Shown piece by piece: positions 17,076 through 39,171 of a stretch of 64,000 bases of DNA. This DNA comes from Perkinsus chesapeaki ATCC PRA-425 (lineage: Eukaryota > Protista > Perkinsozoa): NCBI GenBank assembly GCA_013115145.1, contig JAAPAO010000086.1, positions 1 through 64,000 on the forward strand. Direction: 5' to 3'. A program made the position numbers and the translations under genes. Position 1 is the stretch's first letter, and every line of letters begins with the position of its first letter. The notes beneath the pieces were generated by a model. The model saw only the letters and a list, made by a program, of their open reading frames with translations, was not told where the DNA came from and searched no databases.

Positions 17076-20000
17076 CTACAGCCCACCCATGCCATTAGCC
17101 GACTGATGCTCAGCCAGGTAACGGAGGATCTCCAGGAGCAGCGGCTTATCCAGCGAGGCTAACTTGTCCTGTCGCCCTAAGTATGAAGGCGTCATCTGGC
17201 CAGCGAAGAAGCAGCAGCAAATCGTACCAACTGCAGGGAAGTGCTCTACGATGAAGTCAAGGGCCATCTTTCGTACTGGTCCGACATTTAAGGAGGCCGA
17301 GGCTTCGAAGACATCTACCACGATAAGCTCGTCGGTAAGCTCCCAACTAATGCTACCGAGGACGTCTCTCTCATTGAAGGACTGTCGAAGGGCAACCTCA
17401 CAAAAGTAACGCAATCGTGAGTTAGTGAGCTGATAGAAGTCGGAGGCATCTACGAGGTATCTGAGAATACTATATGATTATACCTGTACAATAGGGAGCT
17501 GCTGCACTTACATCGCTGTTTGGGGCACCATACTGGTGGTGCCGGTATAGACATACTCTAAGAAGGTTTTAAAGCCTGCGGCTGTCATGGAGGACGTCCC
17601 CTCAGGCATCACCTTACGAGCAATAAGAGACAAGTCAACAACAAGGAACACATCGTACCAGACGATTCTTCTGTGACTCGCTCATACCAGATTGCATAAG
17701 CATTGAGAAATACTGGCATCGAGCTGCTAGTACGAAGCTGTGGCAGCGGAAGGCCACACCTTGCACTACGACCTGATACCCGGTTTCGGCTCAGGATGGG
17801 AGTGGGCGAGTATCCCACTTCAAAGTCTCCTTCCAGATCGTCTATTAGTAACTTTTCCATGTCAACATGCAGCGATGATGCTTCTACCTAAGAGACGCTT
17901 CTTCGATAGCAAAGAGACAGCGTATACCGAGATGGGCGCCAGAGGAAGTCTGCGCTGATAAGTGAAGGCTGCGGAGCCCTCTTCACCAGGACCGGGCGCT
18001 AGGTGTATATCCGCAGATGCATCCGTTAGGTAGGACTGAAGTATCATGTTTGCTCAGTCGAGCCGTCAAAGTACTCCTCGTGGAGGGGAGTTGAGTCGCC
18101 CCCCACCGGCGATGTGCGATGGGTTCTGCGTTGCCTGTGTCGTGCATCGCATAAGTTGGCACAGCAGGCGAGGGTCCAGTGTCTCGCAGCTCTCGAGGGC
18201 AGCTGACAACAACCGATGGCCGGCGTCGGCGGCGGCGCGAGGAATAAAGGCCGTACCGCATTCAGCGTAGTTGTTAAGGAAGAAGTACTTGCAAGTTTCA
18301 ACGAGGCTCCGAGTGGTCGGCGTGATGATGCCCTACATCAACTTGCCGCGTGCTTGGGACATCGCGTCTCACGGTATCGTAGCAGTCCCGTAATATAAGA
18401 ACAACGAACTCAGGGCGGAGCTTTATACGGATCTGCCTGTGGCAAAGGGCAGCTAGCCGATCGAGACGGTACCTGGTAGAGGAGATCTCACAGCAGCAGC
18501 AGCGGCGGCGTTTCACGGACTTTGCTGCCTCTGTGAAAAGAGCATAGAGCTCCATACATGTCATCACCGTTAAGTCGAGTACTCTATCACTGTGAATGTA
18601 GTACAAAAGGCGGAGGGTTGTCGACCGGTCTGGGCCTAGGAAACCAGCCTCAGTACTTGCGGTGGAGGCAGAGCTGGCTCGTCTGACCTTCGCCCATCGA
18701 AAGCTGCCACTTCCAGCGCCCCAGTCCATGAGAGCCATCAGGTGTCTAATAGAGTCCAATAAACAGAAACGAAGATCTATCTGTAGACCTCCATCAATCG
18801 GCCTGCCAGGACCGGGCATCGAGTCCTCAGCAGAGGTCTGCTCGCAAATAGCTCCCAGTCAGCAGCGGCATCAGCAGCGGTGGCCGAGGGCACCACCAGC
18901 ACCTAACTTGAAGCATAGAAGGATAACAAGCTGACGCTCAACGGTACGTCACACATGGAGCCACTACAATCCCCTTGGCACTTCAAGAACCGGTCTCCGA
19001 GATCGGAGCTCAGCGTGCACACTGGTGGGATAGCAGATAGGACGAATCGGGAGACGTCGTTGTGTCTGAAGCACCGAGGCCTCTTCATATCTCGTCTAAA
19101 ATAGCTTGACATGCCTGATGTGGCCCGAAGAGCCGCCAAAAATGACCATAGAGTCAAGCTCATCTGCCCCACTGCTGCCGGGCGCGCACCAGCTGTCCGG
19201 CCCTGGACTCGACAACGCTGAATGAATTGGCTGGGGCGCGGTCGCGACTGCTGCATGGAAGTCTCGCCCCGGTGGTGCTTCAAGAGTATGTACCGGTAAC
19301 TGAGGGCAGCTGAGCTACTGTGGTGATGATCGACAAACTGGCGGCACAGACCTGGCTCCAGACTTGAGTGTCGATGTCGAAGGTGAGCAAGTCATTGGTC
19401 CTCCGGCCATCATTCCCACCATACACCAACACCTTGGAGTCGTGGAGCACCGCCGCGTGAGCGTATCTATCTGGGCGCTACGGAGCTACTGTCGCCTGAT
19501 AAACTTACCGGCCTTGTTGAAACAGATCCAGCCCAGAACAGACCAATCTTCGCCAGGTATTTGTACAAAAGTTAAATTCGAACACGTCACCATAGCGTGC
19601 TGTACCAGAGCCACCAACAACGTACATGCAATCATTCCGCACCAGTGCTTGATGCCGGTACCTGAGCATCGACATCGGCCATTCTATCGAGTGCGGTTGC
19701 AGTCCTGACCTCCCAGTTGGCTGCTCTCCGTTCATTATAACACCAAACCAGCGCTTAGAGACCAAGTCGAACCTGTGCATGTCAGTGGGATAGTTTGTGC
19801 CATGTGTGCCGCCCCAGATATATAGCTGCTCATGATGTTGGACCATACACTGACCATACCGGGCTGTTGGGGCATCCTGAAGCTCTGAGTTAAGAGGCGG
19901 GTTGGCCTGAGCGGGCGCAAATGAAACTTGTGCGGCGGGCCGACAGAGCTCACCATGCCAACGTGGCCCACGCCTCCAGGGCGATCGATTGAAACTTCAG

Positions 20001-20474
20001 CGCCTAGAGCGTTCGGTGGGGTGGTGGGCCGCATTGGGGAGGCATTTGTAGATATACCCACCTCACACAGGAGAGACCAAGTACTAGTGTCGTAGGCGAA
20101 CTCATAGAGATCGCACTTGTTAGTATACCCAAAGTGGGATCCGCTGCCACCAAAGACGAACATGGATCCAGCGAGCTCGTCAGAGGTAGCAGTATGGGAC
20201 GCTCTCCCGCTGGGCTTGTCACCATGGCCTTCAATCCTCGTCCACTCTAGCTTGTCCAAATCAAGCTTGTAAAGATCATCGAAGCACTGCTCGCCGTCGA
20301 ATCCACCAAACACATAAAGATACCTACAATGTAGCCTACCACCACCACATATTAGCGAACCACTCGCCTGGAACGGTAAATGCAGGCTGTGTGGCCACTG
20401 CGTATCCGGGGGATGTCACCGGTGCAGTTGGATAGAGGCTCCCAGTAAGGGTACTGCCGAACGCCTGAAGCCAT
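17076..20474 (-). CDS. LZTR1: LZTR1-like Kelch-repeat + BTB-BACK protein (CUL3 adaptor type)
   Basis: Kelch repeats: RSGHTAC..VFGGFDG, RASHTA..VFGGSG, ..IWGGTHG, RHQA..VVGGSG..W; then two BTB/BACK-like segments (RLDRLAALCHRQI; RYFCEVALRQ...RKMALDFIVEHF...LLLEIL). Start may lie slightly further upstream. Confidence 0.75.
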
Positions 20475-26468: not shown

Positions 26469-26756
26469 GGTAGGTAATTAGTCAACTAATAAAGGCGGCA
26501 GAGAGGAGGTTACAGACAAAAGGATCAGTCGCTTCAAGCGTTTGACCTCACTTTATCGAATAACAAATCTTGAGCGGCTCGGGAATGAGGTTTGCCACTG
26601 CCGGGCTCCTTAGTGTAGGTTCCTTCATTGAATTTAGTTAATCCTGCGCTGATGGACCAAGGGCGAGCGCGCAAGATCTGTCGACGCCGCCCGGACACGG
26701 AAGTGTCGTCGCGTAATGCAGAGACAGGCTGGCTCTAACAGTTGCATTATTGCGTA
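26469..26756. promoter_or_regulatory. Divergent strand-switch region, putative bidirectional promoter
   Basis: 288 nt between the ATG of STN1 (minus) and the ATG of the PB1-ZZ gene (plus); inferred from gene geometry only. Confidence 0.45.
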
Positions 26757-29237
26757 ATGAGCATAAGATTCGTACTGAAGTTGAGCTATAAAGGAGAGTG
26801 TGTTAGAGTTAGACCAGAGCCGCAATTCTGCAACAGATATGGTCACATATTAGAGTAAGTAGGCCGCCGCCAGCATATCCCCTCGGATGGTCATCATTCT
26901 CAGTTATATCCGAGAGACCTGGCCAGAGTTATCTTCAACAGGCACAGAGAGGTCGTTTGGGGTATATTACTATGATGAGGCCGGTGACCAGTGTACCCTA
27001 AATGAAAGGACCTTTCCGGACTGCCTAATGCTGCTGCAAGAGCGCAACGCTTATAAGGACTCCGAGGAGCTTCCAGTGCTCAAACTAACTATCAAACCGC
27101 TACCGGAAGTCGAGACATCTCCGAGGCCTGTACCGGTTATGGTTGAGGCATCGAGGAGACTAGAAGAGAAGATCCAGACTAAGACTCACCTGGGATGCCC
27201 AAAGCGAACATCAGGGAAGCTCGCTGTTCACCGTGGATTCATATGTGATGGATGTGAGATGGACCCTCTTGTTGGGGACAGGTAGGCTGGGTGACAGTTG
27301 GAGTGATATAAGGGCGGTAATAGATACAAATGCAACTACTGTGACGACTTTGACTACTGTTCAAAGTGCTACGAGAGGAGGCTCATCCTTGGCCACAACC
27401 CTTTTCACGCCTTCACCTGTTATAAGATGCCCCGCCCTCCCACCAAGGCTCTTAAGTTACTATCAACCAGCTCAGATAAGGATACTATGACTTTGCCTAG
27501 CAAGCTCGAAGAGAAGTCTGTTGGTGATGCCCCAGTGGCCCCCAAAACCAAGTCTGTTGGTACCCTCCCCGAGCCCAGCCTTACCCGTGATGAAAGTGTA
27601 CAGTGGGAAAGCGAAAGGCATTGCACGGTTGCTGGGCCATGGGGCAGCTTGGATATATTCTCTGATGAACCTATTCAAGGTAGTTCACAGAACCTGGCCG
27701 CTCGAGTGGCCAAGGCTTGCACTGCGGCCTCTGAGGCCATGGGACGGCCGGCAAGGGAGGACTTGGAGACTGCTGACAGCTTTGCTGTGGCAGCTGGGAT
27801 ACATTTGGGGATTCAATGTGATCTATGTGGCGAACTGCCTATAGTCGGTCCAAGGTAATAGAGGGATCTAACTGGAATGCCTTCTCTAACGTTGATATCT
27901 GCAACTTCTTTAAAGGCTTTCGAGTGTCTTTAGATGAACACTCGGATGCGGCAGTCATTAGTCTACGCATGTTGGGAGGCTATCCGTAGGAATAACGATT
28001 CAACTCTAACTATTTGGGAGGGGAGGCTTGCAACAACTCAAAATCCTCATCTGTGGATGTCCGTACTGTCAAGCACTATGGAGCGTCAGTAGAGCTACAC
28101 AGAAAACTCCTAGAAACTTACTATCAGCATGTGGTCTTGTATGTAGGACTATTAAGGCCGGGAGGGGTAGCGTCATCGTCAGGTTCAAATGTAGGAAGTG
28201 CAAAGACTACGATTTATGCCAGAAGTGCTTTGACCTAGAAAACCCATCCAAGGCCATCCACGATCACCCTAAGTCCTCGTTCCGCACCCTCACACCACTC
28301 GATACGATACTACTACGTAAGGATCCTCATCGATGGGAGGCACCAGAGGCGGTCAAGGAAGCTCCAGTGGTGGACACTGAGGCTTGTGGTGGGCCTATGT
28401 TCGGGTCTCTGGCGTTGGTCAGCCCCGAGCCCGAGCCGGCTGCGTAAGTCGTTTGGCGATGGATGTTGTTCAGGCTTAGAGGCTCGTGGGGCAATATAAA
28501 GGGTTCCCATAAGCAACACGCTTCTTGTCCTCTTGTATTGGAGATGTTCTTATTAAAATTCAATTTTTGACAACGCTAGGAATATTTTCGGCCCTCCAAG
28601 GAATGCATGCAGTTCTGTGAGGCTGGATGAGCCTTTGCTCAGTCTGACCGAGGCAACAAGCACCATCGCATCCCCCCTGATGGAGCCTGAGAATGGCGGT
28701 GAGATAGAGATGGAAGATCCTCCAGCTGGAAGCACACATGATGATGACAGTAGTAGGAGCGCAATAGGGATGCGGTGAAGATCTCTCTCTGGTAGGCAGC
28801 GGCGGCGGCACAGAGTCAGATTCAATCCCGGAGAGCTGGATGGACTTGGGGGAATTGGAGGACAGTGACATTGAGGATGTCATGATCATTGGCACGCCGA
28901 GGTCCGATGATTTCCAGGTCGGCGGAGAGGTATGGTGCAGTTAATCCGACTCCTTCTGTAGGTCATTACGTCGATTGAAGAGGCAGTAGAGCAGGTAATC
29001 GATAGCAATAGCGTATAGTGGACACGAGTCGGTGTCAGGCACCAGATAGTCTGGTGACGGCAGAGGGACTCGCTGAGGCTCTTGTTCATCATGGAATTAT
29101 CGAAGATAGGAACAGGGCTGCGGCACTGCTTAGCCAAGTAGGACCTTCCGCCAAGTGTAGAGATAGTGTACTGGTTTTAGGTGTCGTCAAATGAAGAGCT
29201 TCGTAGCATGCTCTGTTCATTCCTCGGTACTGACTAA
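26757..29237 (+). CDS. p62/NBR1-like selective autophagy receptor: PB1 - ZZ - ZZ - LIR - helical C-terminus
   Basis: MSIRFVLKLSYKGE...FGVYYYDEAGDQCTL (PB1 with basic Lys and OPCA motif); HRGFICDGCEMDPLVGDR/YKCNYCDDFDYCSKC; HLGIQCDLCGELPIVGPR/FKCRKCKDYDLCQKC; ESDSIPESWMDLGELEDSD; end ALVHHGIIEDRNRAAALL. Confidence 0.8.
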
Positions 29238-29892
29238 GGCCTGCATTCTAGTTAGCAGCTCGCTCATCGGCTTGTGAGACGGGAGCTGCAATTCTGAAGT
29301 AGTTTGTTATTATATGATTTACCCATTTCCTTTTATCCGCAATATCTTGTCAATACTCATTACCATGCATTTTCATAGTGTAAATGTCAGTAGTCACCAC
29401 GGTGGCCCCAGAAGATGTCTACGGGCCAGGAGGAGGAGGGCTCGCGGCTTAGCATCAATACGACTAGTAACCTACTCTAGCGTTGTGTTGACCAAAGGCG
29501 GTTGTGTCGTCTTGTGCTACACTAGTACCGGTAGGATTGTCAGAAGCAACACTAGTACTGCTAGTGTTGTTTCTTCTAATCCATCCTCCTGGGTCCAGCT
29601 GCTAAGACCTAGGATGGAGAGTGATATCTCTTATGTCTTGTAGTGTTAACTTATCAATAATAAAGGATGCCTAGGAAAGTACATTGTGCTGCTGTTTTGT
29701 TGGTAAACCTAGAATACTGTGTGGGCATTCTTGTCGCCACAGCTAGTGTCGACGCCGTAGTCTATTTGGATATATTTCGTATACTTACATGTCAGACATT
29801 AATAAATAGTAAATACTCTTTATTTTTATATACATCTCCTGTGGGCAATACCTTTGGCTTTTCTTACTAAGACTTTGCTATTGTTCTCCCAA

Positions 29893-32284
29893 ATGGCCGT
29901 AGAGGACTTCTTCATCCTTAAGTTAGCCTTTGGCAAGGAGTCACTGCAGTGCCGGTGCCGATATGATACCATCTCCGACGTAAAACAGCTTCACAGGTCA
30001 ACCTCTCTCCTTTGCTGGGCCTTGCATATTTTACCCTTCAGGTTGATCAAAGAGGCGTGGCCGAATCTGAAGTCTACCCCCTACCGAGCGACGCTCCGTG
30101 GTGGTCAGGATCTGATCGACTGGCCTTCTAGTCACACCGCTGCGGCTCTAATAAAAGAAGGTCTGGCTGACTCGGTTTATGCTATGCCTCGACTGAAGCT
30201 CCGCGTCACGGCGTCACATAATACCTCGGGTAAAGTGGACAAGTCTAAGAAGCCATGGCCCATGGATGGCCACAAGCCAGCGGGCGTGCATCTTGCTTCT
30301 TGCTACCATTGCGACATGTTCCCAGTAGTTGGCCGTTGGTGAGTGCTGCCGTTGTTGGTTTCTCCTGCCGGTACTTCCCTTGTCAGTTTCGCATGCAGCA
30401 CCTGTCCCTCGATTGTGTTATGCTCCTGGTGCTTTGACGAGCATGATAAATCCCACACCATTACGCCCTTGGCTATGGCGTTCAATGGTCTTTGGGAGGG
30501 CAGCTTTATGGAAGATAACGCTAGAGATATGACGGATATTCTAAGAAATAGGCATAGGCCCTGGTCTGGGGATACTGTGAAGTAAGAAACATTCCACCCT
30601 ACTCATCGGCTTTGGACCTGCCGCCGGTTGAATTCACCACTCTTCACTAGAATTTTGGACACCATATATTCACCAGATGCTACCCGTCTAGTGTAACACA
30701 TCACCTGCAGCATCGGTCCAGCGCTATTTTACGACCTATGACACTTCAAAACTTGTATTTCATCATGGCTCGGGTGTTCCTTCGAGTCATAGTAAAGCGC
30801 TTCCCACAATGGGTTCCTAATAGGAACTTCCTATTACACCACCGGCCTTCCTCATCCGACATGTGAGTCTCTCGCCAAACGGCTTTATTGTTGCTTTTCT
30901 TATCAGCTTCAATGCGATCCAAGTTGGCGAGAATCCCCTACCCTCCATGGTCGCCGAGATCTTCTCCCGATCCGAGCCGCACCATGAAGAATTGACCAGA
31001 TTCTTCTGTGATGACGGCAAGTCTCTGCTATGCTATCGTCACTACTGCCATGCTTGCGGATGCTCAGCCTCGGTCATGCGCCAGTAAGCTGCCTCCTCTG
31101 GGCTTTTGGCAAGGTTGGCGTGTCAGGTTCCAGTGTGATGGTCGTGGGGACATCAATCTGTGCGACGCCTGTTACATTTTGTGGCGAGACGAGATTTCCA
31201 AGATATCATTCAAGTGCTCTAGGTTGTTCTTGCCTGGGTCATGGAACCCTCTGGGAGTCGGCCCATGGGAGCTGGTCCACTATGGTGTAGCTTGCGAGGA
31301 GTGTGGCATGTTCCCCATAAGAGGAAGAAGGTGAGAAAGGGGAAAACTCAAATAGGAGATTTAGTCGCCTTCTAACATTTTTCCGTTAGTGCGTATTCCT
31401 CAGAAAAACTAGCCCAGGCGTTGTAAGATTTGCGCGGGGATTCTCGCCTCCACTGGCGATTTGAAGAACTTTGTGTATTGGAGGCGGCGGTGTGACTCGT
31501 GATGCGCGCTTCACCAGTAGCATCTGTGTAAGGCAGGATGTCCACAATTCTGTCCCTTAATCAATCGAAACAAAGGATTCTGTAGGTCTTAGGGAGTTGC
31601 TCTACTTCTGTATGATTTTTCCGGCAAGTAGTTCCCACATCTGTGTTATCCAAAGCTGGGGATTATTCCGTGGTCGAATAAAAGCTGTATGTGACCTGTC
31701 TGCGGTGTGTAGGTACCATTGCAACTTCTGCACAGAGCATGATTTGTGTGAGAGCTGTTACAAGGAGACAGCTAATAGGAATCATCGGGAGACACATCTC
31801 TTCACTTTGGTGGTAAAACCGATTAAAGCATGGACGGTGCAGACGAGGAAGCCCAAAGGCATTTTGCTCAGCACTCTCAGATGTGAGAGGTGTGGCCAGG
31901 GGCCATCTGGTGGGGCGAGGTGAGTCGGAATGAACTGGATGTGATGTGATGCTTGTCATCAGATACACTATGGTGGCCTTGCCCGGGTCACGTTACTGTG
32001 GTCCGTGCTATAAAGAGGCTCTGCGGTTCGAAGCCCTCTGTATTCGAGGACCCTATAATAGAGGGTACGAGGCAGTTAATGAAGGTGCATTTAAAATACG
32101 ACAAGGAAAGCTCAAGGCTCTCGAAGGTGGGGCGGCTCTCATAGCCTTGGTAGATTCTTCGTGGCTTAGATTCCCTGGCAAGCACGTGGCTGATGGAGTC
32201 GATGGATCGCCAGTTGAAGGGCCAAGACCCCTTCCCGCTGCCATCGGAACATTCCCCAAACTCGGTATGACGTTTGAACGTTAG
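29893..32284 (+). CDS. PB1-like + four ZZ-type zinc finger protein, paralogue A
   Basis: MAVEDFFILKLAFGKES...IKEAWP; modules CYHCDMFPVVGRW, CHACG..CDGRGDINLCDAC, HYGVACEECGMFPIRGRR/YHCNFCTEHDLCESC, CERCGQGPSGGAR/..YCGPCY; ends LGMTFER. Confidence 0.8.
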
Positions 32285-32729
32285 GAGTCCCTTCATTTCA
32301 TGCTGTTTTAGGTTGTCTGGGCGGACGAGCCACCGAAAGCTCTGAAGCCGCATCACCGCACACTCCTCTATCCCCCGTCGCAGTAGCCTCTTGGCTTGCA
32401 CGTATTCATTCCATTTCAATTGACTCTGTCGTCCACTCGTTGTCTTTGATGTCTTTTGCTCTTTAAGACGTTTACTTGTCTCTTAAGTGTTGTATTGTTA
32501 CACGGCCAGCTGGGCTTCCTAAGGTTTGGCCTCTCCTACCAGCTTCATCGATACCCAGCAGTCACCCTCAGATGGCAGAGGTGCCCAGCGTTGAACTTGT
32601 CGCGCGCCCGGAAATCGGTTGTGGTCAAAGAACCTTGAAGAGGCGTGCAAACGAATGTAAGTGTGAGGATAATAGGTAAGCCTGCCAACGGTGATGATGA
32701 TATAAAATCCTAGTTGATGGTTTCAGTTA

Positions 32730-34835
32730 ATGCTGGACCTGTATTTGCTGAAGCTGAGCTACCAGGGAGAGTCCTTCCGCGTGAAGTTGAGAGTGGAGAA
32801 GTTCCGGACACTAGGGGACTTGGAGAAGTAGGGCGACACTTGTGAAGTGTGCTCTTAAGGCGTTTTTAGGATCGTGTACGCGGCTTGGCCATATCTTGAC
32901 AAGTCCAAGTACAAGATAGTCCTCCCGGACGGCGGCACCATAGATGATGCCTCTGCTAAGATGCGTGTAGCGACTAAGCTATCGGGAGATGCCAAAGATC
33001 CATCTGGTCACCTACCCGAGCTCAAACTCAAAGTGGTTCCATTGAAGGAGGTAGCCCCGATGGTACATCAACCAAAGAAGTTGGGAGAGCTTCGTGCCAT
33101 CGATGGCCATGACTTGGCGGTCACCTACTGGGAGTCATGTGACGGCTGCCAAATGTTCCCGCTTGTGGGGAAGTGGTAAGACCAGAGCGAATTGCTGATG
33201 AGTGAAGAAATGCCGCTCAGGTATATTTGCTACACGTGTGGGCAGGAAGATCTGTGCTTCGCTTGTCGTCAAGGCCACTCAAAGAGCCATAAGGTCATTC
33301 AGTACAGTCCGTCATCGAATGGTATGTGGGATAATGACAACGTTGTTGAGAACGAGCACAAAAGGGTGTTCAAGCTGAAGGTATTGGGGGCCCCCTGCCC
33401 AAAGCCTAAAGAGTAAGGTCTATATTCTACCAAGTGCCAGTGTGCTCGTCAGCTTTGAAGAGATACAGAAGAGACAGGCATCATTACCTCCTATGGTGAC
33501 TCGGACCTTCGCTTTAGACGAGATACCGGACGGCATCCCTGATGTTGCCTGCTACCGTGATGGAGGCAAAGCCATTTACTTTGAGATGTTCTGCCACGGA
33601 TGCGGCACCGGAGCTCAGGTCGCCAAGAGGTAGGAGAAGAATCGCTATCTTTAATGAGGAAAAATATGTTCAGGTTCAAGATGGACGGGCGTGATGATAT
33701 TAACCTTTGTGAAACCTGCTATCTCCTCTATAAGGACAGTGTCCTCTCGTCAGCATACAAGTGTTGTAGGGTGTGGCAGCCTGGTAGGGTGGGACGAGGT
33801 GACGATGGTAAGCCCTTTCTGGCTACCCATTATTCCACTACCTGCTCTGAATGTGAAGAGTCCCCTATTGTAGGACGCAGGTAACCTGGTTACGGCTTCA
33901 CCTCTCCGCCATTGGTGCCTTCATAGGTACACCTGCCTTGTCTGTAGTAATTTCGACCTGTGCTCGGAGTGCTATCGAAGTAGAGCCCAAACCTCTCACA
34001 GGCAGGCTCATGCATTTGGTCTTGTGGCTAAGCCGGTGCCTTTGTGGTCATTGAAGATTGCTAAACCTCGCGGTGTACGTGTTGAGGAATTTAAGTGCAG
34101 TCGATGTGGAAGTCACCCTGACGGCGGAGCGAAGTGAGTTTTGTTTCCGCGTTTTGCGCGCTCTCACATCATCTCAGATATCGGATGAAATTTGGTCCGC
34201 CCGACAGTCGGGATGCCCTCTATTGTGAGCCGTGCTATAAGAAGATGCTTCAGAGGGAGGCTTTGGAGCTCCGAGCTCCTATGGATGCCAGAAGGAGGAG
34301 CATTACACCCTGGAGTCATTCGGCTAGGGCTAGAAGCCGCACCCTGATTTTAGGATTGAAAGGTAGCTCTATTCGTTTAAGAGAGCTATCGCTTAGTGGT
34401 AGGGTCCCTAGCTTTCCGCCTTAACGCCCGACCACGCATGATTGAACTGATAAGGCAGATAGCCCGGGAGACGGGACAGCTGCTCGATATTGACAGCGAT
34501 GATTCGGACTCGGTAAGGTCTTTTGAGGGGAATCAAAGTACAAGTCTTTTACAGTTGGAGTGGGCAGTTGAACCTCCAAAGGAGCTCAAGTCTGATGACA
34601 TTATCGACCAAGGCCCTAATAGGTGATGACCAAGAGTGCTTCAATCCAGGCTCCATATTGTTTCGTATCACTTTCATTGATTACCTTAAACCTGGCATTT
34701 CTTACTTTCACAGTCGAGCCACGATTTTCTTGTACACTTTAGCTTATTGCGTTTGTGTTAGAGCAGGCTATTGCATCTAGAGTATTATGCAGGCCCATGG
34801 GGATGCACTTCTCGAGAGCCAGAAAGCTTCACTAG
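32730..34835 (+). CDS. PB1-like + four ZZ-type zinc finger protein, paralogue B (stop at 34626, or 34835 if a last exon is spliced on)
   Basis: MLDLYLLKLSYQGES...VYAAWP; CDGCQMFPLVGKW/YICYTCGQEDLCFAC, CHGCG..MDGRDDINLCETC, HYSTTCSECEESPIVGRR/YTCLVCSNFDLCSEC, CSRCGSHPDGGAK/..YCEPCY. Confidence 0.8.
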
Positions 34836-35091
34836 GGCTCAGATGGAAGAGAAGGAAGCTTTGGGGAAAATATGTTCTTAACTGAAATAAGATACGTCAA
34901 GTTGGTTTCATGCTCCTCGATTACACCCTGGTTCCATGGCTCTCCTTAGCACTGCCAACACACAGACCATCTTTGTGTGTTCATCGCTAGTCGGAGGAGA
35001 CAGTCGGACCGTTGCACCCTTAAAGTTTGTCTGGCTATTTCGCTGCTACAGTCTGTACCTTGTCAGTATTTGGTCCTTGCTCTTGCCCTCC

Positions 35092-36993
35092 ATGTACGCC
35101 GACTTGTTCTTCATACTTAAGTTGAGGTATGCTGGAGAGTCACTACGGAGTCGATGCCCCTTTAGTAGCATCACTACTATTGCCGATATCTACAGGTAGC
35201 TATTTCATACCGACAATTCCGTACAGTTTTGACTATTAGTCTTATCGAAGAGGCTTGGCCAGCGCTGAAGACTGCCAAGTACACAGTACGGGTGCATGAG
35301 GGCAGGGACCTTGCCACCTACGACAAGAACGCCGCCACTTCCGCGTTGGTGAACAGCGACTGTGGTGTGATGGTGGCTGGCTCACCGAGGGAAGTGCGCA
35401 TGGACATTCAAGGTGGCCCTGATGTCACACCAATCAAGAACCGATCTTCGAGCCCTCCGAAGCCTATGGACGGTCATGAGGTCGCCGTGCTTCATCTGAA
35501 CACATGTCATCACTGTGGTATGGGCCCCATTATCGGGAGATGGTATGAAATAGGGTTTGGACCGCCGCTGCACAAAATCTGTCTCCTTTTGTCAGTTACA
35601 AATGTTCCACTTGCTCCGACTTTACCTTCTGTTCCCGTTGTTATGGCCGCCACGATCCAAGCCACACTCTCACTGTGGTCAGTACAGCTCTCGACGGCAT
35701 GTGGGACAGTCGTGAGGTTGTCGCTGTGTGCAAGGACTTCCTCAATCTGGTTCGCAATATGGGGGAGCCATGGCCTGGCGATCTCGTTAAGTAAGTCCCC
35801 CTTTCTCGTCCGTCCTGATGCCTACCTCAGGATCAAGGACCTCCAGCTGCCCGATCAAAACGTGCCCCTTATGATAGGGGAGACGTTCCCGAAGGCTGAC
35901 CCTCCTTCCAGAGAGGTGCAGCCTGGCCTGTGTAAAGATGGCTGCTCCTTTATAAGCTACAGGATATTCTGTCATTGCTGCAGCAGTGCTGTCAGTAGAG
36001 CCAGACAGTACTACCCACCACGGTCTGCTCCCTATGCCATCCTGTCCCCTAGGTTGCGTTGTGACGGTCGAGCTGACATCAACCTCTGTGATTCCTGTTA
36101 TCTCACTCATCGCACCGTGGCATTGAAACTTGCTAACAAATGCTCGAGGATCGTCACACCATCGCTTTGGAATGATGGCAATGACGAGGCGGTTGAACTG
36201 GTGCACTATGGCTCTACCTGTGATGAGTGTGGGGTGTCCCCTATTGTGGGCCGGAGGTGAGGCTACTGCGTACATGATGAAAAGGAGACAGTTTTTGTGT
36301 CGTGGTATCGGTAGGTACAAGTGCAACTACTGTGCCGAGTACGAGCTATGCAATAGATGCTTCAAAGAGCCCGCCAACAAACAACATCGATTGGAGCATC
36401 TCTTCACTCTCATAGTCAGACCGGCCAAGCTTTGGACGGTGCACACGAAGGACCAGACTGGAACCCTCTTCAGTGAGATGCCCTGTGAGATGTGCGGCAT
36501 CCATCCTCCGGGCGGGGCCAGGTAAAGTCATTGTCGTTTGGCCGTCGCCATCAGTGCCTTTCTGTGTAGGTATACCATTAAGTGCGATTGCAAGGCCCAG
36601 ATGTGCTATGATTGCTATAAGGATGATTTACAAGGGCAAGCGGTCCTGTTGCGTGGGGAATTCTTCGACTACCCGAACCCGGTGAGCATGCAGGCCAGCA
36701 TGGACCGAGAAAGGCAGCGACTCATTTTAAAAAGTAACGTAGGAAATTAGGGCACTTTCGTCAGTGGCTTTTTAGACTCCTTTGCCTCCAACTTGCCTAT
36801 TGGTCTGATGATGGACTCGACTAAGGGGAAGAGTAATAAAGAAGGGGCTCCCAAAGGAAGGGTAGTGAGCGTCTGCGTGCTACGGTAGTAGGGATTTACG
36901 GTACAGGTCATTTGGGCTGATGAGATGCCCCGTGAAGTTAAACCTCACCATAGGATTGTTCGGGCAAGCTGTGGGTGTGGTGGCCATCACTAG
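35092..36993 (+). CDS. PB1-like + four ZZ-type zinc finger protein, paralogue C (3' end approximate)
   Basis: MYADLFFILKLRYAGES...IEEAWP; CHHCGMGPIIGRW/YKCSTCSDFTFCSRC, CHCCS..CDGRADINLCDSC, HYGSTCDECGVSPIVGRR/YKCNYCAEYELCNRC, CEMCGIHPPGGAR/..MCYDCY; downstream exon VQVIWADEMPREVK matches paralogue B. Confidence 0.78.
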
Positions 36994-37324
36994 GATCATT
37001 CATTAATAGCCGTAATGCAGTGTTATGGCCGAATAGGCCATGGTACGTACTAGCTCCTCGCTTCTTCTTCTTATTGAGTAGCTTGAAGCGTTAACGATTT
37101 TGCACTGGAGATGAGTAGTAGCATATTGCACTTACACAATGATTTCAGTTCTCCTAATGTTTCAATTAGCCTCTCTTTTGTTGGGTTACTAATACTTGGT
37201 CGATCGACGCTGGTGGGAGTGACCGCGCGCCACGCTATTCCTTCAGTGCCCCCTTGCTTATACCGTACTTGCCCTTATCACCATTCATCCTCGTCGCTCA
37301 ATAAAGCAGGCAAGCAGCGTGAGA

Positions 37325-39171
37325 ATGGAGTGGGCCTATGGCCTCCTGGCCTCCATCACTGCCTTTACTCTAACCTTCCTAGTCTATAATGTCTACTTCG
37401 TCATGGACCATAGACAGCAGGTCTTAGGTAGTGGGGTGTGGTGGGCATACTAGTGGGACTTTGGACGCAATTAGATTGTCACTTCTCCCGTAGTGTTGTA
37501 GAACTATACGTACGACCACTGAGGCCAGGGTCAGGGTTTTCGAATGGTATGAGGTTGGTGTCGAAACTCGTTGGCAGAGTCACACTGGAGTGGGTACAAC
37601 CAGTTGCTCACAGTATGGCATTATAGTAGATATGGTACGGCTAACCAATCACTATATAGTTGAAGAATAGATCTCAAAGAGCTCGCAACTGGTGCTTCTC
37701 TCAAGGGTATGACTGTATTATTATCGCTCAGCAGTGCAATGGGTGACTTGACAGCGGGAAATATGCCTACCGTGGTAGGAAGCTCTCCAAAGCGGCGACC
37801 TTAGCCTCATTTTTCCTCTTATTGACACCTTCTGAGAGCCGCTTAGCCCGCGTCTATCTAGCCTCCAATTCAGGCGGTACTGCAGGGGTGTGGGGGCTTC
37901 GGGAGTGGATGCTGGCAATGGCGTTTGATGTACCATGGCTGCTATGTTTAATCTGTTACCTTCGGTAAGCCAGCCCAGCTGCTCTCAACTTGGTAGTGCC
38001 AAGGCTTCTCTCTGTAGTGTATTGATGACTAAGCCTGGTAAGGTGCCCAGAAGGTGGACGGAATACGTCACTAAGAACTCTATACGGGTCAGCGTCACCG
38101 AGCAGTCCACATTCCAAGTGGGTGCTTGAATCCTTCCTACTGCTCTCACCAGTCCTTATCAGCCTCGAGCGTCATCTATTTGTGGTGCCTGTATGCGACA
38201 TAGGCCTGAGAGAGCCCATCACTGCACTGTGTGTGGAGAGTGTGTCCTCCGCCATGATCATCATGATTGAGTCACTGGTAGGGCCTTTTCGGAAGCGCTG
38301 CGCTTACTCCCTAGAAAAATGTCGACTATCCATTACTCCTCCTCAGCTCACTTTCAATCTTCATCGGTTCGTCACGGGAAGTACTCACTAGTGCTTTGGT
38401 CCGAAAATTTGCCAGCTTCGCGCGGAGTTCTCGGAAAAATCTTCCCCTTACAATCCGATAATATGCGCATCTTTCAGCTAGTTGCCTTGATTCAGGTGCT
38501 TGCATTGGGTTCCGCAACCACAAGTTCTACGTACTATTCCTCTTCTACGGAGCCCTAGCCTCAACAGTCTTCCTCTTGCTCATCGTACCGCATCTCTCCA
38601 TTCGAGTAGGAAGTATCAGAAAGTCCTTGTTGGCACCAATCCTGTAGATGATGTCCTCTGGTCCACAGGCCAGCTTCCTACCACTGTCGAGTGCAGCGTG
38701 TAGGACCATCGAGGCTTCCATAGCTATGGTTGCAGTAAGGACGATATCATCCCAGTCTCTCAGGCAGCCTGCTTTATCAGTTCCTAGCACTCCCTTACTT
38801 CTACTTCAATCTCCCTCTACAGTGCTCTCAGCTGTGCCGTAACGTCACGGCTCACGAGGCCGAATATGTCGCCACTAATCCTTATGATCTCGGCACTAGG
38901 GTGGCCAATGCGGCAGCTGTAACACCGGGAGGCCACGTGAGGCGGGACTCGGTTGCTTCAGGTTTTTGGGACGAGCTTTGGTCCGATGTTCTTGTACTGG
39001 TTGCTGCCAGTGGACCCTTGTCGTCCTGAGAGCGATGGTCTCTTCTATCCAGTAGCATCGAGCCCGGGGATGTCCACAGCTTGCTCGGTGGAGGATGGTG
39101 GTGGTATGGAGCATTCAATCCAGGCTCTATTAGGGAGAGCTCGTGGAGATACTAAACACATAGATAGGTAG
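37325..39171 (+). pseudogene. DHHC-type palmitoyltransferase with in-frame TGA at the catalytic motif (pseudogene or recoded)
   Basis: TM segments, MTKPGKVP, CGACMRHRPERAHHCTVCGECVLRHDHHD-TGA, then ACIGFRNHKFYVLFLFY, NVTAHE, NPYDLG and FG...LYWLLPV. All family hallmarks are present except DHHC itself. Confidence 0.7.

What the first reader, a model, noticed from the sequence alone, without database searches (positions are those of the whole stretch)
26757..36993. Tandem array of four PB1-ZZ genes: a candidate modular p62/NBR1-like recognition system
Seen: four co-directional genes over 10 kb starting right at a strand switch. All begin with a PB1-like xLKLxY/F-x-xE...WP domain. The first is a complete receptor (PB1, two canonical ZZ, LIR). 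The other three are strongly diverged from each other, each has four ZZ-like modules, and none shows an obvious LIR. Known: p62/NBR1 polymerise through PB1, read N-degrons through ZZ and bind ATG8 through LIR; most genomes have one or two such genes. Inference: one scaffold plus three cargo-sensing adaptors, co-expressed as a unit for selective autophagy or intracellular surveillance. I know of no description of this arrangement.
Basis: partly seen in the sequence, partly recalled or inferred. Interest (0 to 1): 0.85.

Follow-up and report, generated by a model that had tools for sequence, protein, structure and literature searches.

The report
Perkinsus tandem p62-like PB1-ZZ genes
The clam parasite Perkinsus chesapeaki carries one gene built like the animal autophagy receptor p62, followed by three old, conserved relatives that keep the docking domain and four zinc-finger modules but lack p62's autophagy and ubiquitin tails. 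This arrangement is undescribed and its function is untested.

Summary
The window is Perkinsus chesapeaki contig JAAPAO010000086.1, bases 1-64000.

Four co-directional genes, each with 9 exons, lie at 26757-36993 just after a strand switch.

- **Gene 1 (561 aa):** it has an N-terminal domain that folds as PB1 (NBR1 PB1, Z 11.4). It also has two complete ZZ fingers with the p62-type acidic pocket and a W-x-x-L motif conserved in three species. The tail is probably UBA-like. There is no FW domain. Its best whole-protein structural matches are animal p62 proteins.
- **Genes 2-4 (505, 517 and 508 aa):** each has a homologous ubiquitin-like N-terminus that keeps the basic face but has lost the acidic motif. 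Each carries two full and two half ZZ modules. Each ends in a conserved Trp motif encoded by its own last exon. None has a LIR or a UBA.

Shared intron positions and phases show descent from one gene by duplication. The array is syntenic in P. marinus (four paralogues) and P. olseni.

Orthologues are intact even though synonymous sites are saturated (pN 0.18-0.27, pS about 0.78).

The scaffold-plus-adaptor autophagy model is plausible but untested, and RNA evidence is scant.

The scan noted this same stretch in an overlapping window. It also noted other PB1 gene arrays elsewhere in this genome.

I class it as a new variant of a known kind.

The parts
26757..29237 (+). Gene 1 (561 aa, 9 exons). 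Domain order: PB1, ZZ, ZZ, LIR-type motif, UBA-like tail. It is the GenBank protein FOL47_010739 (P0155).
   Evidence: The spliced model reproduces P0155 exactly. The best whole-model structural matches are sequestosome-1 proteins.
26757..27105 (+). g1 PB1 domain (residues 1-100; split by a phase-2 intron at 26855-26903). It has Lys8 on strand 1, Arg17/Arg19 on strand 2, and a Y-D-E-A-G-D OPCA-like loop between strands 3 and 4.
   Evidence: AlphaFold pLDDT is 82-92 with a b-b-a-b-b-a-b topology. Foldseek hit: NBR1 PB1 2bkf, TM 0.83. In the VIA search the top 12 hits are all PB1 domains, Z 8.6-11.4.
27235..27417 (+). g1 ZZ1. All eight zinc ligands are present, and the acidic pocket (C-D-G-C ... 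D-F-D) is intact. The intron is at 27282-27323.
   Evidence: Pfam ZZ. Sequence matches to the ZZ domains of HERC2 (6e-12) and p62 (1e-9), with the pocket residues aligned.
27808..28276 (+). g1 ZZ2. All eight zinc ligands are present, and the acidic pocket (C-D-L-C ... D-Y-D) is intact. It is split by a 328-bp intron at 27855-28182.
   Evidence: Pfam ZZ. Sequence matches to the ZZ domains of PRT1 and KCMF1.
28828..28860 (+). LIR-type motif of g1: E-S-W-M-D-L-G-E, with Ser/acidic residues on both sides.
   Evidence: Conserved in P. marinus, P. olseni and P. chesapeaki. ATG8 binding was not tested.
29054..29228 (+). g1 C-terminal three-helix, UBA-like module (residues 516-559).
   Evidence: AlphaFold gives three helices at pLDDT 82-87. 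The Foldseek alignment to p62 runs on to p62 residue 436. The nearest protein-language-model clusters are all UBA or CUE, at score 0.72, which is a lead only. Pfam and PDB sequence searches are negative.
29893..32386 (+). Gene 2 (505 aa, 9 exons). Domain order: PB1-like, ZZ1, half-ZZ2, ZZ3, half-ZZ4, C-terminal Trp motif. It is the GenBank protein P0005.
   Evidence: The model is identical to P0005. The P. marinus orthologue Gb is intact, with pN 0.21 against pS 0.78.
32730..34626 (+). Gene 3 (517 aa, 9 exons). Same architecture as gene 2. No gene call is on record for it in the protein collection.
   Evidence: There is no gene call between 32386 and 35092. The guided model is, and the last intron, 34513-34554 (GTAAGG...ACAG). 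The P. marinus orthologue Gc is intact, with pN 0.27 against pS 0.79.
35092..36993 (+). Gene 4 (508 aa, 9 exons). Same architecture as gene 2. The public annotation fuses it to the downstream DHHC gene as P0004.
   Evidence: The model was guided by P. marinus P0001. It is 69-73% identical to orthologues in P. marinus and P. olseni. A 167-nt contig from an RNA run lies at 35372-35538 inside exon 2.
32312..32359 (+). C-terminal Trp motif of g2 (V-V-W-A-D-E-P-P-K..K-P-H-H-R), encoded at the start of the last exon. The equivalent motifs are at 34555-34602 in g3 and 36907-36954 in g4.
   Evidence: The motif is conserved in all four paralogue orthogroups and all three species. A phase-0 intron lies directly before it. 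Its partner is unknown.
31290..31812 (+). g2 ZZ3, the best-conserved complete ZZ of the paralogues, split by a 382-bp intron. The equivalent modules are at 33840-34026 in g3 and 36216-36414 in g4.
   Evidence: Pfam ZZ on P0005, P0001 and P0019. Foldseek match to the HERC2 ZZ domain, TM 0.83, rmsd 1.5. hhalign against the g1 ZZ domains gives 99.2%.

Best explanation
This is an old, tandemly duplicated, Perkinsus-specific branch of the PB1-ZZ (p62/NBR1-type) receptor family.

Shown:
- All members descend from one 9-exon ancestor.
- The four paralogue lineages and gene 1 predate the split of P. chesapeaki, P. marinus and P. olseni.
- All are kept intact under purifying selection.

Gene 1 has the p62 layout without an FW domain. 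Its parts are:
- a PB1 with both a basic face (Lys on strand 1, Arg on strand 2) and an OPCA-like acidic loop;
- two ZZ fingers with the acidic pocket that reads protein N-termini in p62;
- a conserved W-x-x-L motif in an acidic tail;
- a three-helix, UBA-like end.

Inferred mechanism:
- Gene 1 polymerises head-to-tail through its PB1, binds N-terminal or ubiquitin signals, and links them to ATG8 membranes.
- Genes 2-4 keep only the basic PB1 face, so they cannot polymerise on their own. They could dock on the acidic face of gene 1, or of another OPCA-bearing PB1 protein.
- Their diversified ZZ pockets and half-ZZ modules would bind particular cargo proteins, as the ZZ domains of fission-yeast Nbr1 do.
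- Their shared C-terminal Trp motif binds a partner that is not yet known.

The descriptive part I hold at about 0.9. The confidence given here is for the docking-and-delivery mechanism as a whole.
For: - PB1 fold of g1.
- Homology of the paralogue N-termini to it. They also share a phase-2 intron at the same position.
- ZZ pockets of g1 align with the acidic pocket residues of p62.
- Every ZZ or half-ZZ module has a phase-2 intron at the same place within the module. The modules are related by hhalign at 85-99% to ZZ3 or the g1 ZZ set; ZZ2/ZZ4 against ZZ1 or each other give only 35-72%.
- W-M-D-L is conserved in three species, and it is the only such motif outside folded domains apart from a second F-Q-V-I candidate.
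- The whole g1 model matches sequestosome-1 first, with alignment from PB1 to the C-terminal helices.
- The g2 model matches S. pombe Nbr1 over its ZZ region, then p62 and NBR1.
- The array is syntenic in P. marinus, next to the same DHHC, MMS19, octopine-dehydrogenase and XPG genes, and is present in P. olseni.
- pN 0.18-0.27 against pS about 0.78, with intron identity 44-49%.
- The orthogroup tree.
- ZZ-mediated cargo choice by Nbr1 is established: bioRxiv 10.1101/2021.02.07.430097.
Against: - No interaction, localisation or expression-pattern data exist.
- PB1, UBA and FW are not detected by Pfam in any member. The PB1 call rests on predicted structures made from shallow alignments (8 and 9 rows, mean pLDDT 52-58).
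- The ZZ domains of g1 were poorly modelled.
- The paralogue N-terminus is not separated from UBX, SUMO or ATG12 folds by structure alone.
- The UBA call is a lead, not a result.
- RNA support is minimal, and absent for g2 and g3.
- The genome is reported to hold other PB1 arrays and another p62-like gene, so g1 need not be the partner.
- Gene adjacency is explained by duplication alone.
Confidence: 0.42

Rival explanations
1. The genes are neighbours only because they arose by tandem duplication, and the paralogues work independently of gene 1. They would use their basic PB1 face to join other acidic PB1 proteins of the expanded Perkinsus PB1 repertoire, or none at all. Their conserved C-terminal Trp motif would be their own link to downstream machinery.
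For: - The paralogue clade is separated from g1 by a very long branch (2.59 changes per site).
- The paralogues share a motif of their own, encoded by a dedicated last exon.
- Copy number varies between species: three in P. chesapeaki, four in P. marinus, at least four and more spread out in P. olseni.
- Earlier notes report several other PB1 arrays in this genome (not checked here).
Against: - g1 is the only member at the locus with the complementary acidic OPCA-like loop.
- The g1-first order and adjacency are kept in all three species.
Confidence: 0.33
2. The family has nothing to do with autophagy. These would be PB1-ZZ scaffolds for signalling or for ubiquitin-ligase-type N-degron reading, as with the ZZ domains of KCMF1, HERC2, PRT1 or BIG. 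The W-x-x-L of g1 would be a chance or unrelated motif.
For: - The best sequence matches of the g1 ZZ domains include the ZZ domains of HERC2, PRT1 and KCMF1 as well as p62.
- W-x-x-L motifs are short and common.
- No FW domain is present.
- PB1 domains also serve kinase scaffolds; atypical PKC and MEKK/MEK5 are among the fold hits.
Against: - The W-M-D-L motif with its acidic flanks is conserved in three species inside an otherwise fast-evolving disordered tail.
- The domain order PB1, ZZ, LIR, helical tail matches p62 from end to end.
- No ligase or kinase domain is present in any member.
Confidence: 0.2
3. The paralogues are decaying duplicates or annotation artefacts without function.
For: - No gene call is on record for g3, and g4 is mis-joined to the next gene.
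- No RNA words were found for g2 or g3 in the small runs available.
Against: - All eight compared gene copies in two species have complete 9-exon reading frames with GT-AG introns.
- pN is 0.18-0.27 while pS is saturated at about 0.78 and introns are at random-level identity.
- Zinc ligands are conserved module by module.
Confidence: 0.03

Closest known systems
Sequestosome-1 / p62 (Metazoa)
   Same: Gene 1 has the same domain order: a PB1 with basic and acidic faces, a ZZ with the Asp pocket, an acidic W-x-x-L LIR, and a C-terminal three-helix module. It lacks FW and coiled-coil domains. p62 proteins are its best whole-model structural matches.
   Different: Gene 1 has two ZZ fingers instead of one. 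No TRAF6-binding or KEAP1-binding motifs were seen. Sequence similarity is limited to the ZZ domains. Pfam does not detect its PB1 or UBA. p62 is held to be confined to animals (PMC9582228), so this would be a parallel derivation and not an orthologue.
NBR1 (plants, animals, protists)
   Same: It shares the N-terminal PB1 followed by ZZ, a LIR and a C-terminal UBA. The NBR1 PB1 is the best single-domain structural match (Z 11.4).
   Different: The FW (four-tryptophan) domain that defines NBR1 homologues is absent from all four genes. No coiled coil was seen.
Fission-yeast and fungal Nbr1 (multi-ZZ, NVT pathway)
   Same: These proteins carry several ZZ domains in a row that select protein cargo through an acidic pocket plus cargo-specific contacts. 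S. pombe Nbr1 is the best structural match of the g2 model.
   Different: Fungal Nbr1 keeps the FW domain. The Perkinsus paralogues have none. Instead they alternate full and half ZZ modules and end in a Trp motif of their own. They are separate genes in an array, not one receptor.
ZZ N-degron readers in ubiquitin ligases (HERC2, KCMF1, PRT1, BIG/UBR4)
   Same: These are the closest sequence matches of the individual ZZ fingers.
   Different: Those proteins have ligase or other catalytic contexts and no PB1. The similarity is at the level of a single domain only.

Membership tests
p62/SQSTM1-type receptor | N-terminal PB1 fold | tested here: met
   g1 residues 1-100 have pLDDT 82-92. The top Foldseek and VIA hits are PB1 domains. 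Pfam PB1 itself is not hit.
p62/SQSTM1-type receptor | PB1 of type AB (basic Lys/Arg cluster plus acidic OPCA motif), which allows head-to-tail polymers | tested here: inconclusive
   At motif level, Lys8 lies on strand 1, Arg17/Arg19 on strand 2, and Y-D-E-A-G-D in the strand 3-4 loop. These are conserved in three species. Polymerisation cannot be tested here.
p62/SQSTM1-type receptor | ZZ finger with acidic N-degron pocket | tested here: met
   Both g1 ZZ domains have all eight ligands and the Asp triad, aligned to the p62 ZZ.
p62/SQSTM1-type receptor | LIR (W/F/Y-x-x-L/I/V with acidic flank) that binds ATG8 | tested here: inconclusive
   The W-M-D-L motif is present and conserved. Binding was not tested. 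The paralogues have none outside folded domains.
p62/SQSTM1-type receptor | C-terminal UBA domain | tested here: inconclusive
   The model shows a three-helix bundle at pLDDT 82-87. The alignment to p62 reaches its UBA. Protein-language-model neighbours are UBA or CUE at 0.72. There is no Pfam or PDB sequence hit.
p62/SQSTM1-type receptor | Descent from the metazoan p62 lineage | not testable with these tools
   The sequences are too diverged outside the ZZ domains. The review places p62 in Metazoa only.
NBR1 | FW (four-tryptophan, NBR1-box) domain | tested here: not met
   There is no Pfam hit in P0155, P0154, P0083, P0005, P0001, P0011 or P0019 at E up to 1. Neither model contains a beta-sandwich of that size.
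NBR1 | PB1 or ZZ domain | tested here: met
Pfam ZZ (PF00569) | Cross-brace of eight Cys/His ligands recognised by the family model | tested here: met
   This is met for g1 ZZ1 and ZZ2 and for paralogue ZZ3; ZZ1 reached significance in P0001 and P0011 but not in the window's own g2 (P0005, one stretch, 309-351). Paralogue modules 2 and 4 are not recognised by Pfam. They keep ligands 1, 2, 5 and 6 only and relate to ZZ by hhalign at 85-94% and by a shared intron position.
Fungal multi-ZZ Nbr1 | Several consecutive ZZ domains in one PB1-bearing receptor that also has an FW domain | tested here: not met
   Multiple ZZ domains are present, and S. pombe Nbr1 is the top structural hit. FW is absent.

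The most novel reading that the evidence does not exclude
An alveolate parasite has evolved, independently of animals, an FW-less p62-type autophagy receptor. Alongside it sits a battery of three to four PB1-capped multi-ZZ adaptors. These dock on the acidic PB1 face of the receptor and spread cargo or N-degron specificity over separate genes. The result would be a heteromeric receptor system with a reversed polarity of the p62-NBR1 pairing.
Probability: 0.25. Interest if true: 0.75.

Novelty: new variant of a known kind. Interest (0 to 1): 0.55.

Why it matters
The current view is that p62 is restricted to animals and that most other eukaryotes have a single NBR1 defined by its FW domain (PMC9582228).

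A p62-style receptor without FW in Perkinsus would show that the p62 layout can arise more than once. Its conserved PB1-(ZZ)4 neighbours would show that cargo-reading ZZ modules can be split off into separate docking proteins.

It also gives concrete candidates for selective autophagy or protein quality control in a commercially important shellfish parasite. All of these genes are currently labelled 'hypothetical', no gene call is on record for one, and one is mis-joined to its neighbour.

Together with the other PB1 arrays reported by this scan, it points to a large lineage-specific expansion of PB1 networks in Perkinsus.

Tried and rejected
- **Pfam on single exon pieces** gave only half-ZZ hits, because every ZZ is split by an intron.
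- **A first de novo splice-path search** over-extended reading frames through short in-frame introns. I replaced it with a protein-guided spliced aligner, which reproduced P0001, P0155 and P0005 exactly.
- **Sequence searches for PB1** found nothing significant. These were the PDB with single sequences and with profiles and Pfam. The best PB1 hit was the PKC-iota PB1 at E 0.67.
- **A PDB profile search for the UBA-like tail** found nothing.
- **Word-based protein searches** found only Perkinsus orthologues.
- **The exhaustive search** found thousands of ZZ proteins, but full-length matches only in Perkinsus.
- **Jukes-Cantor dS** could not be computed for three of the four pairs because pS exceeds 0.75. 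I therefore report pN and pS instead of a ratio.
- **The long introns of g1 and g2** (325-382 bp) were tested for a shared inserted element. There is none in the window.
- **A remnant of the fourth paralogue (Ga)** between g1 and g2 was looked for and not found.
- **RNA runs:** only tiny contig sets were served.
- **Literature:** no paper links Perkinsus with NBR1, p62 or PB1 domains in the searchable library.

Full report
**Identity of the DNA**

The window is a eukaryotic sequence with very short GT-AG introns. A locus fetched for a homologue, L003 from Perkinsus chesapeaki GCA_013115145.1 contig JAAPAO010000086.1, is identical to window 25092-49494 with no mismatch. Contig coordinates equal window coordinates.

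In the record held by the protein collection:
- gene 1 is called at 26757-29237 (561 aa);
- gene 2 is called at 29893-32386 (505 aa);
- nothing is called between 32386 and 35092;
- gene 4 is joined to the next gene (DHHC) as an 868-aa product, P0004.

The neighbouring upstream call is on the minus strand and ends at 26628. The array therefore starts 128 bp after a strand switch.

**Gene models**

Translating stop-free stretches showed the exon pieces. Pfam on these pieces gave only half-ZZ matches, because each ZZ is interrupted by an intron.

I wrote a protein-guided spliced aligner and validated it. It reproduces P. marinus P0001 from its locus, and P0155 and P0005 from the window, residue for residue.

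With orthologues as guides, all four window genes have nine exons:

| Gene | Coordinates | Length |
|---|---|---|
| g1 | 26757-29237 | 561 aa |
| g2 | 29893-32386 | 505 aa |
| g3 | 32730-34626 | 517 aa |
| g4 | 35092-36993 | 508 aa |

The last intron of g3, 34513-34554, has textbook GTAAGG...ACAG ends. Most introns are 40-58 bp. Two in g1 (328 and 199 bp) and two in g2 (325 and 382 bp) are longer and are unique sequence.

**Relatives and synteny**

Word-based searches found only Perkinsus proteins.

The exhaustive search with P0001 gave 3630 hits at E 0.001 or better. Only Perkinsus clusters matched over the full length. All others matched through a ZZ finger alone; they include ticks, a snail, a chytrid and unnamed metagenomic proteins, some labelled NBR1.

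In P. marinus the locus holds five tandem genes: G1, Ga, Gb, Gc and Gd. They are followed by the same DHHC, MMS19, octopine-dehydrogenase and XPG genes. All five are intact 9-exon genes.

P. olseni has G1 and Ga adjacent, with further paralogues on the same contig.

A maximum-likelihood tree gives a g1 clade and a paralogue clade with four orthogroups. These are Ga, Gb (= g2), Gc (= g3) and Gd (= g4), and each is older than the species split.

Ga is missing from the P. chesapeaki locus, and no remnant lies between g1 and g2.

**Selection**

Between P. chesapeaki and P. marinus, synonymous sites are saturated (pS 0.75-0.79) and short introns are 44-49% identical. Non-synonymous differences are 0.18-0.27.

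A distance-corrected ratio could be computed only for g4 (about 0.05). Intact frames across this divergence rule out pseudogenes.

**N-terminal domain**

No sequence method detects PB1.

The AlphaFold model of g1 (8-row alignment, mean pLDDT 52.5) has a confident N-terminal domain. Residues 1-100 have pLDDT 82-92 and the topology b-b-a-b-b-a-b.

- Foldseek against the PDB returns PB1 domains first: aPKC, plant and human NBR1, p62/PKC-zeta. For 2bkf the TM-score is 0.83 and the rmsd 2.1 Å.
- The Foldseek-independent search puts twelve PB1 domains on top (Z 8.6-11.4), above generic ubiquitin-like folds.

Lys8 lies on strand 1 and Arg17/Arg19 on strand 2. A Y-D-E-A-G-D loop between strands 3 and 4 sits where the OPCA motif sits in type-A PB1 domains. 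All of these are conserved in P. olseni and P. marinus.

The g2 model has a beta-grasp N-terminus (pLDDT 70-89). It matches UBX, SUMO and ATG12/ATG8 folds as well as it matches the Par6 and NBR1 PB1 domains (Z 8-9.8). Structure alone therefore says only 'ubiquitin-like'.

Homology to the g1 PB1 is shown in three ways:
- BLASTP, E 5e-6;
- hhalign, 94%, E 1.2e-7 over 91 columns;
- a phase-2 intron at the same position.

The paralogues keep the Lys (Arg in Ga) and the strand-2 Arg but have no D-E-x-G-D loop.

**ZZ modules**

Gene 1 has two complete ZZ fingers (Pfam 8.5e-23). Both carry the Asp residues that form the N-degron pocket of p62. Their best PDB sequence matches are the ZZ domains of HERC2, p62, PRT1 and KCMF1.

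Each paralogue has four modules:
- Modules 1 and 3 have all eight ligands.
- Modules 2 and 4 keep only ligands 1, 2, 5 and 6. From established knowledge of the cross-braced ZZ fold, this is the Cys4 site. They have lost the Cys2-His2 site.

Every module, in g1 and in the paralogues, has a phase-2 intron at the same intradomain position.

Module profiles relate to each other in register at 85-99% for the pairs that involve ZZ3 or the g1 ZZ set; ZZ2 or ZZ4 against ZZ1, and ZZ2 against ZZ4, give only 35-72%. One caveat applies: the modules were cut in register and are short and Cys-rich.

Pocket residues differ between orthogroups.

**Tails**

In g1 the disordered tail holds E-S-W-M-D-L-G-E, conserved in three species. 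A second candidate, D-D-F-Q-V-I, is also present. These are the only conserved W/F/Y-x-x-L/I/V motifs outside folded domains.

The last 45 residues of g1 form three helices at pLDDT 82-87. Three lines of evidence bear on them:
- Protein-language-model neighbours of this part are all UBA or CUE clusters, at a score that is only a lead.
- The Foldseek alignment to p62 runs to p62 residue 436.
- Pfam and PDB sequence searches are negative.

No FW domain is present.

The paralogues have no such motif or tail. Instead, their last exon begins with a conserved x-x-W-A/V-D/E/V-E-x-P-K/R motif, preceded by acidic residues in some members. It fits neither the LIR core nor any motif I could assign.

**Whole-protein comparison**

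Against Swiss-Prot AlphaFold models, g1 matches sequestosome-1 of four mammals first (E about 1e-8, aligned end to end). Atypical PKCs, plant NBR1, NBR1, Ref(2)P and JOKA2 follow.

g2 matches S. pombe Nbr1 over its ZZ region first (E 2.7e-7), then p62, NBR1 and Ref(2)P.

TM-scores are low because the linkers are flexible. These results show a shared domain order, not a shared rigid fold.

**Comparison with the literature**

The NBR1 review (PMC9582228) makes three relevant points:
- It defines NBR1 homologues by an FW domain plus PB1 or ZZ.
- It states that p62 is confined to Metazoa.
- It states that most non-metazoans have one NBR1.

By that definition none of the four genes is an NBR1. Gene 1 works like a p62 in layout.

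ZZ domains of fission-yeast Nbr1 select hydrolase cargo through the acidic pocket plus cargo-specific contacts. This is the precedent for a cargo role of the paralogue ZZ modules.

No paper in the library connects Perkinsus with NBR1, p62 or PB1 domains.

**Expression**

Only small RNA contig sets were available.
- Two P. chesapeaki RNA runs hold 15% and 7% of the sampled words of g1.
- One 167-nt contig, identical to the window, lies inside g4 exon 2.
- Nothing was found for g2 or g3.

No splice joint was observed. This neither supports nor refutes co-expression.

**Context from the scan**

Earlier notes report the same stretch read in an overlapping window. They also report other PB1 arrays elsewhere in this genome: a five-gene array with a p62-like member, PB1 plus triple-UBA arrays, and a PB1-ZZ-ZZ-ZZ gene. 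I did not check these. If they are right, the paralogues have many possible PB1 partners.

**Verdict**

The family assignment (p62/NBR1-type PB1-ZZ proteins, expanded in tandem, old and under constraint) is well supported.

The scaffold-plus-adaptor autophagy mechanism is the best available reading but rests on motif-level inference. I give it about 0.4.

Noticed in passing
window 32730-34626: No gene call is on record for gene 3 in the protein collection, although it is an intact, conserved 9-exon gene.
   Followed up: yes
window 35092-38800: The public model P0004 (868 aa) joins gene 4 to the downstream DHHC palmitoyltransferase gene. It skips the last two exons of gene 4 (36776-36861 and 36907-36993). 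In P. marinus and P. olseni the two are separate genes. Only about 117 bp separate the gene 4 stop from the next ATG, at 37111.
   Followed up: partly
L001 2422-4652 (P. marinus) and L005 5834-8493 (P. olseni): A fourth paralogue lineage, Ga, lies directly after gene 1 in P. marinus and P. olseni. It is absent from the P. chesapeaki locus, with no remnant in the 655-bp spacer at 29238-29892.
   Followed up: yes
window 27586-27663 (g1 residues 247-272) and the following helix, residues 280-297: Inside the otherwise disordered ZZ1-ZZ2 linker of gene 1 there is a strongly conserved stretch containing V-Q-W and G-P-W-G-S-x-D-I-F. It is modelled as a three-stranded sheet plus a helix at pLDDT about 70. 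Its function is unknown.
   Followed up: no
window 28903-28973: Gene 1 has a second LIR-type candidate (D-D-F-Q-V-I) about 25 residues after W-M-D-L. It is conserved in most, but not all, Perkinsus copies.
   Followed up: partly
window 27855-28182, 30582-30906, 31331-31712: Three introns of 325-382 bp sit where the P. marinus orthologues have 44-133 bp. They share no repeat with each other or with the rest of the window.
   Followed up: yes
window 19738-20313 (- strand): A Kelch-repeat gene lies upstream on the minus strand. In a P. marinus copy of the locus (L006), Kelch and BTB genes lie just upstream of the gene 1 homologue.
   Followed up: no
L005 16091-16795 and L002 5562-5901 (P. olseni): P. 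olseni has further paralogue-like pieces spread over about 40 kb between its Ga and its gene 4 orthologue. Its array therefore appears larger and interrupted.
   Followed up: partly
L006 and contigs holding P0044 and P0179 (P. marinus): The P. marinus assembly holds second, diverged copies of gene 1, Ga and Gc on other contigs. These could be a second haplotype or a duplicated locus.
   Followed up: no
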